Positions 151 to 5,266 of a stretch of DNA of 5,266 nt are shown one piece after another (the stretch's first letter is position 1; each line of letters opens with the position of its first letter). This DNA is from Zygophlyctis sp. KS116 (lineage: Eukaryota > Fungi > Chytridiomycota): contig BAAFSQ010000488.1 of NCBI GenBank assembly GCA_054661495.1, positions 1 through 5,266 of the forward strand, written 5' to 3'. A model generated the notes under the pieces. It worked only from the letters and a program-made list of their open reading frames with translations. It was not told where the DNA came from and ran no database searches. A program made the translations under genes and the position numbers.

Positions 151-2301
151 CTTATTAGAACTATCAACTTCTGAAACTAATTTCTCCAGCTCTTGCTGTT
201 TTTTTCTTTCGTTCGCCGTATTAGCTTTTTCCAGTTCGACCTAACATGAATGTAAGTTTGCCTACCTCTTCGGTCAGATCTCTCACTATTCCCGTGAATA
301 GATGGGCGCCATCTTCTTTAACCTCTGATACAGACAAAAGAAGCGGGAAATGTGATCCATCTTTCTTTAGCCCAAAGGCACGTCTACTGCCACCAATAAC
401 CTTTTTAACGCCAGTAGTTAAGTAATTGGTGAGATAAGAATCATGTTCCACAGAATAGTTAGAGGGCATCATATCCCTAATATTTTTGCCAAGTACTTCA
501 GAAGAGGAATAGCCAAACATTTTTTCGGCTGCCGGATTGAATCTGCGTATTGTTCCGATTGGGTCAATATTGATAATACCATCCACGACAGTATCCAAAA
601 CACTATTAAGGATTCGTCTCTCCACAAGCATTTTCAATTCAGCATCATGTACAGATGCCTCCATTGCAATTTCCTTTTCTTGAACGCTAGTGATGTTTTC
701 AAGCTCCTGCTCATGGTCCGATCGCAGGCTTTGCAGCTGCAGATCATGAGATTCGTCCAAGTCACGTAGTCTTGCTTGTACAGACAGCTGACAATCCTCC
801 ATCTCTTGTTTCAGAGTCAGTATGAGAATGGAAAGGGCTTCAGCATGTTTTTTTTGCAATGTTTTCAGTGCGATTTTCCCTTTATCCGCGATTTGTTCAA
901 TAGACCCCGCACCATCAGTACGCTCTTCTTCGTCCTCCTGGGTAGTTTCAAACTTAATCTTTATATTGGATATATTAAGACCGTTGGCTGATCTTGAAGC
1001 AACTGATCCGCCTACTACTGATCCACTAAAATCACTCTCGCCTCGATCAACTGATTCTAATGATTCAGCTCTTGACATTGATGCTGAATGTGCCCCAGAC
1101 TGTCTACTACGGCTCGGAGAAGCTGATGAAATTTTAATAGTAGATGCAACAAGCCTACTATCAACATTCCGGTAACGCTGTTGAAGAGCTATTTCTTGTT
1201 GTGATTTCAATGCTCGAATCTGATGTCTATGCATCTGGTTGAGTTTTTTAATTTCAGTGGCATGTTGTATCTCCAGAATCGACACTTTATCTCTTTCATG
1301 TTTTGCAGCAAGTCGTTCCTTTTCTGCAGTCAGTTCCTGATTTTGACAAGTTTCTAGATCTGCCTTTCGACTGATATGCTCTGCTTTCAGCGCTTCTATT
1401 TCGTCGAAACATTTTATATCCAGATCAAATCTTTCTTTTGCTTGTTGAGCCTCAGTTTGCTGGATTTCTCGAAGCTGGTCACCAATTCTCTTATTAAGAG
1501 CTCTATGCCTTTAAATGAAGTTAATTACGTTTGATGGTTGATACGAACTTGTAAGTTCTTTGCTAACGATGCTTTTACTTCTTCTTTCAAATGTCTATTT
1601 TGAATATCATTAATCATTCTCTCATACTGAAGTTTTCTCTCTTGGGAGGCAGCAAGCTGTTTTCTTTGTTTCTCATGAAGACTCTCCATATGTTGCATCA
1701 GAAGGTCAAATGCCGCTCTCTTTCTAGCAAGTATTTCCTTTACTCTTGATGCCACTCTTGATGCCTCCTCTTGAATCATAATGGTTCGATCTCTATTCTT
1801 TGTTTGTCGCATCATAGTTCGCAATGTTTTTTTTGCCAACTTTCTATCCTTTCTCGCCTCAAGAGTCTTTGAGAACGCATCCTTACGTTGGATCAGTTCC
1901 TCCTTTTGTAAAGTTTGAGTGAATGCTATTTCCGCTTCATTTCTTTGGACCATAAAGCCTAGATCTTCCCTATATCTTGCTTCATCTTCAGCTTTTTTCA
2001 TGTTTGCTTCTACAGCCACACAATCATTTCGGACACTTTCAAAGACTGAAAATGCTTTAGCATTCACATGCTCCATAACTGGCTTGATTGCTTCTTCATC
2101 TGCAGCGGATGATCCCTTAGTTATAACTTCTGCTTTTGCTGGCTTGAACTGGCACACTGAATTTGGAGAAGTGGTAGATCCGCCACCACTGGCAGCGGTG
2201 TCCGAAGAAATTGTCGATACACATCCTTTTGACGCATCTTCTGCTAATGGCTTGCGTTCAGATATAATAACTTCTGGCTTTGCAATTCTATCAACTCTCA
2301 T
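1..2301 (-). CDS. Soluble coiled-coil / FixL-like PAS / class III adenylate-guanylate cyclase, 3' end outside window. Exons 2301..1529, 1502..266, 240..<1 (750 aa visible)
   Basis: Two GT-AG introns (1503..1528, 241..265) join ORFs 1525..2301 and 221..1285 and the frame at 240..1 into one stop-free frame. Exon 3 reads VELEKANTANERKKQQELEKLVSEVDSSNKRANDLIGQMLPPKAAAQLLKGVTPSPESFGSATIFFSDIVGFTTICSQIT, i.e. the cyclase signalling-helix motif (MLP..AxxL) and the catalytic FSDIVGFT motif. ATG at 2301 is preceded by an A-run. No transmembrane segment seen. Confidence 0.9.
241..265 (-). other. 25-nt spliceosomal intron, phase 0
   Basis: GTAGGCAAACTTACATTCATGTTAG on the minus strand; removal joins the PAS end (DLTEE) in frame to VELEK and the cyclase domain. 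Confidence 0.9.
266..613 (-). other. PAS domain, FixL heme-PAS-like
   Basis: ILNSVLDTVVDGIINIDPIGTIRRFNPAAEKMFGYSSSEVLGKNIRDMMPSNYSVEHDSYLTNYLTTGVKKVIGGSRRAFGLKKDGSHFPLLLSVSEVKEDGAHLFTGIVRDLTEE; canonical PAS motifs FNPAAExMFGY, G.KDG..FP and RDLTE. Confidence 0.93.
1503..1528 (-). other. 26-nt spliceosomal intron, phase 2
   Basis: GTAATTAACTTCATTTAAAGGCATAG on the minus strand; removal gives RINHQT-ALNKRIGDQLREIQ and an open frame to 266. An in-frame AAG acceptor at 1509 (20-nt intron) is a less likely alternative. Confidence 0.82.
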
Positions 2302-2744
2302 TTTTTATTGTTGTGTAAACTCGTCATGCATCATGTAAACATAGTTTGCTCCAGACCGCAATCTATGAGTAAATTTGAGACAGAACTGTAAACAAACCAT
2401 TTGTCTAAATATAACTCTTAATTACTCGAATGATTACTAAGACTGCGGCCAACTTTGTATCTAGCAGTGTTTGCTATTACTCATTGTTTCCATTAAATAT
2501 GCAAATATTAGCAAATTGTCCGAAACTTATCCAAATCGTCACGTTTTTACGTTTAGCCTTGAATGATTTGCATACCAATAAAAAATATATGTATTGAAAA
2601 TGTCAAATAAAGTATTTATTTCTAATTTGCTCATACCACTTAAATTAAATTCAGGAGAAGGATGACCAACCTTTATAAGTATGACGTCAACAGAAAGCAT
2701 TGTTCTCGAGAACAATACGTAAACATAAAGTTAAACAATATAAA
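2302..2744. promoter_or_regulatory. 443-bp head-to-head intergenic region, probable bidirectional promoter
   Basis: AT-rich non-coding stretch between ATG 2301 (-) and ATG 2745 (+); CCAAT at 2575..2579, TATAA-like at 2674..2678. Confidence 0.6.
2682..2689. promoter_or_regulatory. Perfect CRE/ATF-type bZIP palindrome TGACGTCA
   Basis: Exact 8-bp palindrome about 55 nt upstream of ATG 2745; half-site CGTCA at 2537..2541. Function not demonstrable from sequence. Confidence 0.35.
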
Positions 2745-2816
2745 ATGATATCGATCTCCTTTAAGAAATCTATCTTGGCATTGGCTTTAGCTGCACTTAT
2801 AGCTGGAGTAAATTCC
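2745..2816 (+). other. Signal peptide
   Basis: MISISFKKSILALALAALIAGVNS: basic KK, hydrophobic core, probable cleavage VNS/QA; ATG in AAAATG context. Confidence 0.85.
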
Positions 2817-5266
2817 CAGGCTGTGAACACAGCAATACAATCACATGAAATCAAGGTTATTATTGCAGTAGACAATCTATACAAATTAACTGTCGATGGG
2901 CAGACCATCCCAGTGGATCCCAAATATGGATGGTCAACTATAAATACTCACAAGTTTACTGTGGCAGGAGAAGGACCATGGGTTGTAGCCGTGGATGGAA
3001 TTGACGTGGGTTATGCTTCAGGCTTTTTGGGAGCCGTATATGTTGATGATGTATTGAAAGCAGCTTCAGGGACTACAGATCCTGGCATTATTGATTTCAA
3101 AACAATACTTAATCCATCCGCTGGATGGAATCAGTCTGCAAGTTTTGATGATTCACTTTGGTCTTTACCAGCAGTCTGCAATATCAACCCTTGGGGAGGT
3201 TGGCTAAGTACCTTCCGGTCTTTAACAAAGTCAAATGCTTCTGTCGTATGGTTAGAATCTTGTTGGAAAGTCTGGATGACAGCCTACTTTAGAGTTGTTG
3301 TGACTCCTACAGTTCAAAATATCCCGGAATATTGCAATTCTAGTTCTCCACAATGCTGCCACGTTGTCCGTATCTGGCAATTGATGGGAAAGACAACTAC
3401 AGTTGACCCCAATATCAACAATAGCTGTTGCTCTATGGCTGGAGTTACTTGCAATACAGATCTTGGAACAGTCTTAACGTTGAATTGGACCTCACAAGGT
3501 CTGTCCGGAATAATCCCTTCGAATATTGGAAATTTGCCAAATTTACAAAGTCTGTAAGTCTATTTGCGAATTTAAATATCAGTGACTTGAGTAACAATCA
3601 TCTTTCAGGCACCATACCTGCTGAGATTGGAAATTTGTCTTATTTGCAAAATCTGTAAGAATTTTTGTAATTTAATCTTAAAGTAACTTGACTAACAATT
3701 ATCTCTCAGGAAAAATTATACCTCAGATTGGTAATTTGACAAATTTGATTACGCTGTAAGACTTTCTAATTTAAAAATAGCGGAATGGCCAAAAATAAAT
3801 TCTCGGGACCGATTTTCCCCGAAATTGGTACGCTGAAAAATTTGGTTGATCTGTAAATATTTTTAAATTTAACTGTTAGTAATCTAAGCAACAATTGGCT
3901 GTCAGGAGTATTTCCAACTGAGATTTTAAACCTTCCGAATTTACTAAATCTGTATTTATTTCTTTATGTTGAAAATTACAGTGTTATTTCTAACAATGTG
4001 GATCTCAATGGATTTTATATTGCCAGATGCGGAATTAATATGTAAATCTCTCACATTAAAATTTAAAGAAAAGCAGATGCTACTGAAATTTTATTACGGC
4101 AATGTGTGGCGAATTGCGATTCCTCGTCTCCTCAATGTTGCTGGGTTGTCCGATCATGGCGATTGATGGGAAAGTCATCAAGTGTTGATCCAACTGTACC
4201 AAATGGCTGCTGTTCTATGCCTGGAGTTACTTGCGTCGGGACAAATGTTACAAAGTTAGTTTGGAATCATAATCAGCTGTCTGGACCGATTCCTTTAGAG
4301 CTTGGGAATTTGAGCAGTTTAGAGAATCTGTAAGTTTTTAAATTTGATATTCTAGTCATATGTGGGGCAATCAACTCTCGGGACCAATCCCTTCTGTGAT
4401 TGGAAATCTAAAAAACTTGCGTGAAATGTAACTTCTTTGCGTTACGTTTAGTGAACTTAGCTCGAATCGGCTCAACGGGTATATTCCTCCAGAGTTGGGA
4501 AATTTATCATCTTTAACGGCACTGTATTTTTTGAAAGATATAATATACAGACTCTTGGGATTTAATCAGCTAGATGGACCCATTCCTTCAGAGATTGGAA
4601 ATTTAGCAAATTTGAAATACCTGTATACTTTAACTAATTAACCTGAAAGTCACATTGAACAGAATAAATTATCTGGTATTATTCCGACAGCTATATATCA
4701 GTTGACAAATCTTGAAAGACTGTAAATATAAATATTAAGTAATCGCAGATGGCTCAACAATAATCAACTATCTGGAGAAATATCAACTCAAATCGGGCAG
4801 CTGTCCAAGTTGACTTCATTGTATTTATATATATATCTATAAACTTAAGATTATTACATGTCAATCAATTTGCAGGATCAATCCCTTCAATTGCACAGCT
4901 GAATAATTTGCAAGAAATGTAATGCTCTTTAAATATAACTCATAGTAACCTGAGCGACAATAAATTCTCAGCACTTCCGCTCGCAACCTGTGACTCCTCA
5001 TCTTCTCAGTGCTGCTGGGTTGTCCGATCATGGCAATTGATGGGAAAGACTGCAATGTTGCAATTGATAGGAAAATCATCTCTAGCTCATCCCACCAAAG
5101 AAAATGGCTGCTGTTCTATGCCTGGAGTTACTTGCGTCGGGAAAAATGTTACAAAGTTAGTTTGGAATCATAATCAGCTGTCTGGACCAATTCCTTTAGA
5201 GCTTGGGAATTTGAGCAGTTTAGAGAATCTGTAAGTTTTTAAATTTGATATTCTAGTCATATGTGG
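2745..5266 (+). CDS. Secreted or cell-surface lectin-like domain plus multi-module LRR receptor-like protein, 3' end outside window. Exons 2745..3553, 3583..3654, 3684..3755, 3781..3852, 3880..3951, 3982..4041, 4069..4329, 4356..4427, 4452..4523, 4551..4622, 4650..4721, 4749..4820, 4850..4918, 4946..5230, 5257..>5266 (714 aa visible)
   Basis: Removing 14 phase-2 GT-AG introns gives one stop-free frame with repeats fitting LxxLxLxxNxLSGxIPxEIGNLxx (e.g. DLSNNHLSGTIPAEIGNLSYLQNL, ELSSNRLNGYIPPELGNLSSLTAL, LLGFNQLDGPIPSEIGNLANLKYL). N-terminal signal peptide and many N-x-S/T sequons. Confidence 0.9.
2847..3308 (+). other. Beta-sandwich lectin-like domain (CBM67 / Pleurotus ostreatus lectin-like)
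   Basis: Ordered motifs AVDNLYKLTVDG, GW, VVAVDG, GFLGAV, GWNQSASFDDSLW, PWG, ASVVW, YFRVVV; recognised by pattern recall only, no search run. Confidence 0.6.
3333..5135 (+). repeat. Three copies of a 6-Cys LRR N-cap (3333..3452, 4115..4234, 4989..5135)
   Basis: C-x6-CC-xVVRxWxLMGK-xn-CCSMxGVTC in all three copies, each followed by LRRs. Confidence 0.9.
3554..5256 (+). other. 14 miniature phase-2 introns: 3554-3582, 3655-3683, 3756-3780, 3853-3879, 3952-3981, 4042-4068, 4330-4355, 4428-4451, 4524-4550, 4623-4649, 4722-4748, 4821-4849, 4919-4945, 5231-5256
   Basis: All start GTA and end AG, are AT-rich and 24-30 nt long; each removal restores frame, and 13 fall at the same Leu/Ile codon of the LRR. 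Confidence 0.9.
4201..5266 (+). repeat. Near-identical direct repeat 4201..4365 vs 5102..5266 (offset 901), running off the window end
   Basis: 163/165 identical by manual comparison (4242 C vs 5143 A; 4288 G vs 5189 A), including an identical 26-nt intron. Confidence 0.95.

What the first reader, a model, noticed from the sequence alone, without database searches (positions are those of the whole stretch)
3554..4945. One-LRR-per-exon cassette array: candidate shufflable immune or recognition receptor
Seen: nine exons of exactly 72 nt and one of 69 nt, each one LRR, all flanked by phase-2 introns at the same codon position (CT/AT/TT|GTA). Any exon can be skipped, duplicated or swapped without frameshift. 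Known: the same layout occurs in plant ERECTA/SERK receptor genes and in Ectocarpus LRR-ROCO genes, where exon shuffling has been proposed to diversify candidate pathogen receptors. Inference: this locus could be a combinatorially diversifying extracellular receptor system in a microbial eukaryote with about 27-nt introns.
Basis: partly seen in the sequence, partly recalled or inferred. Interest (0 to 1): 0.85.

Follow-up and report, generated by a model that had tools for sequence, protein, structure and literature searches.

The report
Chytrid secreted lectin-LRR repeat protein
A lake-dwelling, probably chytrid, fungus carries a large family of secreted binding proteins built from one-repeat exons; this member has sugar-binding domains at its ends and varies between lake samples by ordinary DNA recombination that ignores exon borders, so it looks like a variable host-attachment protein rather than a shuffled immune receptor.

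Summary
In detail: nine 72-nt and one 69-nt LRR exons, 14 phase-2 GT-AG introns of 24-30 nt; one junction is seen in lake RNA. A complete paralog ends in a second lectin domain, with no membrane helix, kinase or ROC-COR. About 90 caps occur in this 12.7-Mb genome. The family is variable: hypervariable concave residues, internal duplications, and different module arrangements in three samples, including a collapsed 901-bp duplication here. But the exon is not the unit of exchange: the intron cuts the binding strand in two, the duplication junction lies inside an exon, linkage decays within exons with no extra drop across introns, no inverted or orphan exons were found, and module 1 is colinear with its paralog. 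Best reading: a secreted lectin-LRR recognition or adhesion protein diversified by unequal crossover and gene conversion. The layout is known from brown algae and plants; I found no paper on it in chytrids or on the lectin-LRR-lectin build. The scan noted this family earlier on other contigs (s1-560669).

The parts
2486..2744 (+). Upstream/promoter region shared with the paralog on contig C306 (about 98% identical from 2536), duplicated or converted together with the gene start
2745..2843 (+). Start codon, hydrophobic signal peptide and short linker; identical in protein to the C306 paralog
   Evidence: hydropathy only; no signal-peptide predictor run
2844..3308 (+). CBM67 / Pleurotus ostreatus lectin-like beta-sandwich domain (155 aa) with the Asp-Asn motif
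3324..3553 (+). Cysteine-rich cap 1 plus first LRR, end of exon 1
3583..3951 (+). Module 1: four 72-nt LRR exons with 25-29-nt phase-2 introns; colinear with C306 paralog
3982..4041 (+). 60-nt end-of-block LRR exon
   Evidence: equivalent exon ends each block in C306 and C1165
4069..4329 (+). Linker, cysteine cap 2 and first LRR of module 2
4356..4918 (+). Module 2: five 72-nt exons and one 69-nt exon
4946..5230 (+). Hybrid exon: start of an LRR (4946-4964), in-exon junction at 4964/4965, variant cap with a 9-residue insertion, first LRR of a second copy of module 2
4289..4964 (+). Segment collapsed by the assembler: contig end 5190-5266 equals 4289-4365 (77 nt) and contig C1165 begins with 4888-4964 (77 nt), implying a 901-bp tandem duplication with exit to C1165 (third module and C-terminal lectin domain)
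   Evidence: overlaps measured; path inferred
5231..5256 (+). 26-nt intron whose donor is confirmed by an RNA contig

Best explanation
The gene encodes a secreted, soluble protein: signal peptide, CBM67-like lectin domain, three or four [cysteine cap + plant-type LRR block] modules and (inferred) a near-identical lectin domain at the C terminus. It belongs to a four-gene lectin-bearing branch of a family of dozens of secreted LRR genes in a freshwater zoosporic fungus, probably a chytrid. The lectin ends most likely tether the protein to glycans (host or own wall) while the LRR faces bind variable protein or glycan targets, as in host recognition, attachment or interference (inferred). Diversity arises in the germline by homology-driven unequal crossover and short-tract gene conversion among roughly 100-nt exon+intron repeats and among the conserved cap sequences. 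One intron per repeat is the footprint of duplicating that unit; any in-register crossover keeps the frame wherever it falls, so introns are not needed as swap points.
For: Shown: exon structure and one spliced junction. Lectin fold by profile and structure; nearest named homologs are Batrachochytrium and Homolaphlyctis proteins. Complete paralog C306 has signal-lectin-3 modules-lectin-stop and no internal membrane helix. 93 cap matches and 7 lectin matches in the genome; 174 72-nt LRR exons in 22 fetched stretches. Exact internal duplications of 2-3 repeats in L007 and L025. Ends of exact shared tracts of 40 nt or more fall in introns in 19 of 83 cases (23%), no more than the 28% introns occupy. 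Association between variable sites decays from z 2.3 under 10 nt to about 0 beyond 40-50 nt inside exons, and crossing an intron adds little (coefficient -0.13 z, sign not stable in subsamples); similarity across the intron r 0.12 versus across the exon core 0.055. The window's own duplication junction is 19 nt inside an exon. Runs X2 and X3 show other arrangements of cap 2, and module 1 at about a quarter of flank depth. N- and C-terminal lectin copies are identical over 278 nt, and identity to C306 is patchy (100% next to 63-80%), as conversion predicts.
Against: No ligand, host or life stage is known. The 3' end is inferred from 77-nt assembly overlaps, not read. Contig depth is a weak measure and the tool filters records. 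Short-range association may partly reflect residue co-variation, and exact-match ends also mark later point mutations. For this gene's module 1 versus C306, concave positions show pN 0.12 < pS 0.27 (20 codons), so fast binding-face change is shown for the main subfamily (pN 0.64, pS 0.54, framework pN 0.05), not for this gene. Taxonomy rests on few named hits; two neighbouring genes hit Blastocladiomycota at about 50-60%.
Confidence: 0.65

Rival explanations
1. Exon-cassette system: whole 72-nt exons are skipped or exchanged through introns (alternative splicing or intron-targeted, possibly somatic, rearrangement) to generate a combinatorial repertoire.
For: All LRR exons are symmetric phase 2-2; the longest exact duplication (210 nt, L007) starts and ends in introns; brown algal ROCO genes show alternative splicing of such exons (PMC11378527).
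Against: The intron cuts the variable strand (most variable positions lie on both sides of it); no intron enrichment of tract ends or linkage breaks; no inverted or orphan exons and 23-30-nt introns cannot hold them; the single RNA junction joins adjacent exons; skipping would need a ~130-nt intron where every intron modelled is 30 nt or less; from my own knowledge, skipping is rare where splicing is intron-defined.
Confidence: 0.1
2. Secreted effector or decoy delivered at or into an algal host, mimicking or binding host surface proteins, with the lectin ends only for localisation.
For: Plant-type LRR consensus, no membrane anchor; fungal secreted LRRs, including one from the chytrid Globomyces, were proposed as mimics of plant receptors (bioRxiv 10.1101/2025.08.22.671746).
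Against: No host or expression timing; same diversification mechanism would apply, so this differs from the best reading only in target.
Confidence: 0.15
3. Defence or self-protection: soluble pattern-binding proteins against bacteria, viruses or hyperparasites (immune-like opsonins).
For: Hypervariable concave face in the family; CBM67-like lectins bind Gal, GalNAc, GlcNAc and L-rhamnose (PMC11186620), and rhamnose is common on bacterial surfaces (own knowledge).
Against: No signalling or killing domain; LRR immune receptors are nearly absent in fungi (PMC2939053); a single zoospore gains little from soluble opsonins (inference).
Confidence: 0.07
4. The rearrangements are assembly or amplification artefacts and the repeat array drifts neutrally.
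For: Fragmented 1175-contig assembly; window end is a graph loop; junction contig in X3 has only 30 nt on its left side (below the tool's 31-nt rule).
Against: The variant cap joined to module 2 is one contig in an independent study (X2, depth 247) and in RNA (X16); framework residues are under strong purifying selection.
Confidence: 0.05

Closest known systems
Brown algal LRR-ROCO genes with type I LRR exons (Ectocarpus, Saccharina; PMC3341825, PMC11378527)
   Same: One 24-residue LRR per 72-nt phase-2 exon; variable concave residues; expanded family.
   Different: Those are cytoplasmic GTPases whose exon runs from GxxP to LxxNxLx, keeping the whole strand in one exon, with long introns that hold non-coding and inverted LRR exons. 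Here the protein is secreted, has no ROC-COR, the intron splits the strand, introns are 23-30 nt and no stray exons were found.
Plant LRR-RLK/RLP genes with many introns (ERECTA, SERK) and PGIP-type secreted LRRs
   Same: Plant-type LRR consensus with the SGxIP motif, cysteine cap before the repeats, signal peptide; one-repeat exons in ERECTA/SERK (own knowledge, position not tested).
   Different: No membrane helix or kinase in complete paralogs; caps and LRR blocks are themselves repeated; lectin domains at the ends; cap gave no Pfam LRRNT hit.
CBM67-like lectins: Pleurotus ostreatus lectin (6KBJ, 6T0Q, 6T1D), Streptomyces avermitilis rhamnosidase CBM67 (3W5M/N); tandem copies in Batrachochytrium and Homolaphlyctis hypothetical proteins
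   Same: Fold, profile match and the Asp-Asn/Asp-Asp motif at the first strand.
   Different: Here fused to LRR modules; the Batrachochytrium and Homolaphlyctis proteins scanned are lectin repeats with no LRR hit; sugar specificity untested.
Fungal secreted LRR proteins (ZtLRR group; chytrid high-copy LRR-RLK-like families, PMC13618815)
   Same: Secreted or surface LRRs in fungi including chytrids, proposed for host detection or mimicry.
   Different: Those reports describe neither one-repeat exons nor lectin fusion in the passages I searched.

Membership tests
Brown algal exon-shuffling LRR-ROCO | One LRR per 72-nt phase-2 exon | tested here: met
Brown algal exon-shuffling LRR-ROCO | Exon holds the whole LxxLxLxxN strand (type I boundary before GxxP) | tested here: not met
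   Exons start at xLxxN and end at LxxL; boundary splits the strand (versus PMC3341825)
Brown algal exon-shuffling LRR-ROCO | ROC-COR GTPase domain | tested here: not met
   Complete paralog C306 and inferred 3' end (C1165, C306 fragment) end in a lectin domain and stop; the window gene itself is cut by the contig end
Brown algal exon-shuffling LRR-ROCO | Non-coding or inverted LRR exons within introns | tested here: not met
   nhmmer on 22 stretches, both strands: none inside introns; opposite-strand hits only at E 0.02 or worse
Brown algal exon-shuffling LRR-ROCO | Diversifying selection on concave residues | tested here: inconclusive
   Main subfamily pN 0.64 vs pS 0.54 at five positions; this gene vs C306 pN 0.12 vs pS 0.27; simple counts on recombining repeats
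Brown algal exon-shuffling LRR-ROCO | Alternative splicing of LRR exons | tested here: inconclusive
   One junction seen, adjacent exons
Plant LRR-RLK/RLP | 24-residue plant-type LRR consensus | tested here: met
   Position consensus over 174 exons
Plant LRR-RLK/RLP | Single membrane helix after the LRRs | tested here: not met
   Terminal exons of L011, L013, L016 end in the lectin domain; hydropathy peaks of 1.3-1.7 lie inside that soluble fold
Plant LRR-RLK/RLP | Cytoplasmic kinase (RLK) | tested here: not met
   Stop codon follows the lectin domain in all four lectin-bearing 3' ends
Plant LRR-RLK/RLP | Same intron position as ERECTA/SERK | not tested
   Recalled only; the paper passages read did not give the position
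CBM67-like lectin | Beta-sandwich fold of POL/CBM67 | tested here: met
   AF2 pLDDT 95.7; VIA Z 9.7 (6KBJ, rmsd 2.9, 115 aligned) and 9.2 (3W5N); top five all POL or rhamnosidases; Foldseek ranks the same entries first but at E 0.07-0.26
CBM67-like lectin | Sequence profile match | tested here: met
   81-sequence profile: POL E 3e-20, 3W5M E 5e-12; no Pfam hit for the window domain itself
CBM67-like lectin | Calcium-site residues | tested here: inconclusive
   Window D10-N11, W30, D54 align with 3W5M D179-N180, W203, N228; their role as ligands is from memory, the paper was not held
CBM67-like lectin | Calcium-dependent sugar binding | not testable with these tools
   needs protein assay

The most novel reading that the evidence does not exclude
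These lake chytrids run a gene-for-gene style host-recognition repertoire: lectin-anchored, secreted LRR binders whose modules and binding faces rearrange fast enough (perhaps within clonal lineages) to set strain-level host range on phytoplankton.
Probability: 0.2. Interest if true: 0.8.

Novelty: new variant of a known kind. Interest (0 to 1): 0.5.

Why it matters
The molecules by which chytrid zoospores recognise algal or cyanobacterial hosts are unknown; lectin-sugar recognition has been proposed (PMC13391722). A secreted lectin-LRR-lectin protein in a large, polymorphic family is a concrete candidate that can be expressed and tested, and gene callers miss it because 160 of 174 donors put a stop right after the split codon. 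It also gives a case where one-repeat exons accompany diversification without the exon being the unit exchanged, which bears on how the brown algal 'exon shuffling' claim should be tested.

Tried and rejected
Pfam on exon 1 and the lectin domain: nothing. First fold with 5 sequences was poor (pLDDT 58) and its Foldseek result was discarded. Metagenome scan with the lectin alignment: no confirmed locus. Homolog search with cap 1 plus first LRR: none. ESM Atlas: no usable hit for exon 1, uninformative taxa for TAF5. Following the operators' note, the spliced model was searched exon by exon by reference; the joined protein was not searched or folded (it was translated in a script only to check the frame). 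Rejected: bacterial origin (introns, RNA junction); alternative acceptors of intron 6; membrane receptor; intron-targeted shuffling as the main mechanism; naming the species (Rhizophydium megarrhizum genomes average 15.4 Mb; identity not tested).

Full report
Observation. The window holds a + strand gene starting at 2745. A model with 14 introns, all GTA...AG, 24-30 nt and phase 2, is open to the contig end; alternative acceptors for intron 6 break it. A lake metatranscriptome contig (run X16) joins 5101-5230 to the exon sequence of 4356-4382 without mismatch, which confirms one junction; X15 covers 2995-3145. The regularity is not chance, but it is what duplication of a 100-nt exon+intron unit produces (period 101).

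Anatomy. Exon 1 encodes a signal peptide, a 155-residue domain, a cysteine-rich cap and the first LRR. Caps recur at 4115 and 4989, so the protein is built of [cap + LRR block] modules. The 155-residue domain has no Pfam hit, but a profile from 127 relatives (alignment A2) matches Pleurotus ostreatus lectin at E 3e-20 and the CBM67 of Streptomyces rhamnosidase at E 5e-12; the AlphaFold model (pLDDT 95.7) gives Z 9.7 and 9.2 to the same structures. Its best named homologs are tandem-repeat proteins of Batrachochytrium and Homolaphlyctis. With freshwater-only occurrence and neighbouring genes whose few named hits are zoosporic fungi, the organism is probably a chytrid; this is not proven.

Family. 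The 12.7-Mb genome gives 93 cap matches and 7 lectin matches. In 22 fetched stretches there are 174 72-nt LRR exons, with 141 introns of 23-30 nt between them. Contig C306 holds a complete paralog: signal, lectin, three modules, lectin, stop. All lectin-bearing 3' ends stop right after the lectin, with no membrane helix or kinase. The same layout occurs in related lake organisms (L029, L032, L033), and an intron-free contig of a relative (L031, read as a transcript) shows the same modules followed by a different C-terminal domain, so whole modules and end domains are also recombined.

The end of this gene. The last 77 nt of the window equal 4289-4365; contig C1165 starts with 77 nt equal to 4888-4964 and ends with 77 nt equal to C306 4739-4815. 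These look like assembly-graph overlaps. The simplest path is a 901-bp tandem duplication of module 2, collapsed over 4289-4964, with exit through C1165 into a third module and a C-terminal lectin that is identical to the N-terminal one over 278 nt. This path is inferred. The duplication junction (4964/4965) lies 19 nt inside an exon and the second cap carries a 9-residue insertion. Three samples thus differ in arrangement, with the caveat that contig depth is crude and records are filtered.

Is the exon the shuffled unit? Five tests say no or not shown. (1) The most variable positions (3.4-3.9 bits) lie at both exon ends, so the intron cuts the binding strand; in Ectocarpus the exon keeps it whole (PMC3341825). 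(2) Ends of exact shared tracts are not enriched in introns (19 of 83). (3) Similarity is linked at least as well across the intron (r 0.12, p 0.007) as across the exon core (r 0.055, p 0.12); the difference is not significant. (4) Association between variable sites decays within exons over about 40 nt and crossing an intron adds little. (5) No inverted or orphan exons were found. For this gene, the four module-1 exons each match the same-position exon of C306 best (12-19 differences) and show pN below pS, whereas the main subfamily has pN 0.64 versus pS 0.54 at concave positions and 0.05 at the framework. An ortholog of another lectin-bearing gene from a different sample is colinear at 94.5%. 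Exon skipping is untested beyond one normal junction.

Mechanism. Shown: exon structure, lectin fold, family size, mosaicism, sample-level polymorphism. Inferred: secretion; germline unequal crossover and short gene conversion among repeats and caps; glycan tethering through the lectin ends with variable LRR binding, most plausibly in host recognition or attachment, for which lectin-sugar interactions have been proposed in chytrids (PMC13391722). Effector mimicry and defence remain open.

Novelty. One-repeat phase-2 exons are known in brown algae, plants and gonadotropin receptors (PMC11378527). My six paper searches found no description of this layout in chytrids or of a CBM67-LRR-CBM67 protein. 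It is a new variant of a known kind, not a new diversification system. The scan had noted this family on other contigs (s1-560669) and the lectin domain on this window (s1-545139); I reached and tested both readings before or apart from those notes.

Noticed in passing
window 224-2301, - strand: Divergent gene with coiled-coil region and a PAS domain (Pfam PAS_9 E 1.5e-13); homologs carry a guanylate/adenylate cyclase domain and the PAS part resembles FixL-type sensors.
   Followed up: partly
L011 (C306) 4673-4975: Remnant downstream of the paralog: a broken cap start joined to the last half of a lectin domain 96% identical to the window's; either a deletion remnant or the true 3' end of the window gene cross-joined by the assembler at a 77-nt shared word.
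   Followed up: partly
L011 2678-2823, L026 3377-3500, L018 5674-5739: Places where two repeats lie in one exon: apparent intron loss or in-exon deletion junctions.
   Followed up: no
L024 782-840; L010 270-311: Frame-broken or internally deleted LRR exons inside arrays (pseudogene or skipped exon candidates).
   Followed up: no
all 72-nt exons: 160 of 174 donors read as a stop codon directly after the split codon, and only 2 of 141 introns are both 3n and stop-free, so intron retention nearly always truncates.
   Followed up: partly
window 2873; L003 (C1165) about 738: The lectin Asp-Asn motif reads Glu-Asn in the C1165 copy, and runs X2 and X3 show that base at 2873.
   Followed up: no
L012 3345-3896, L014 2022-2576, L021 408-950, L031 C terminus: Most non-lectin family members end in a different cysteine-rich C-terminal domain of about 180 residues.
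   Followed up: no
L010 1350-2243, L023 2174-2650: Some members carry cysteine-rich CPAG-type repeats before the cap.
   Followed up: no
proteins P0136, P0137, P0139: Batrachochytrium hypothetical proteins with 4-9 tandem CBM67-like domains, unannotated as lectins in the names shown.
   Followed up: partly
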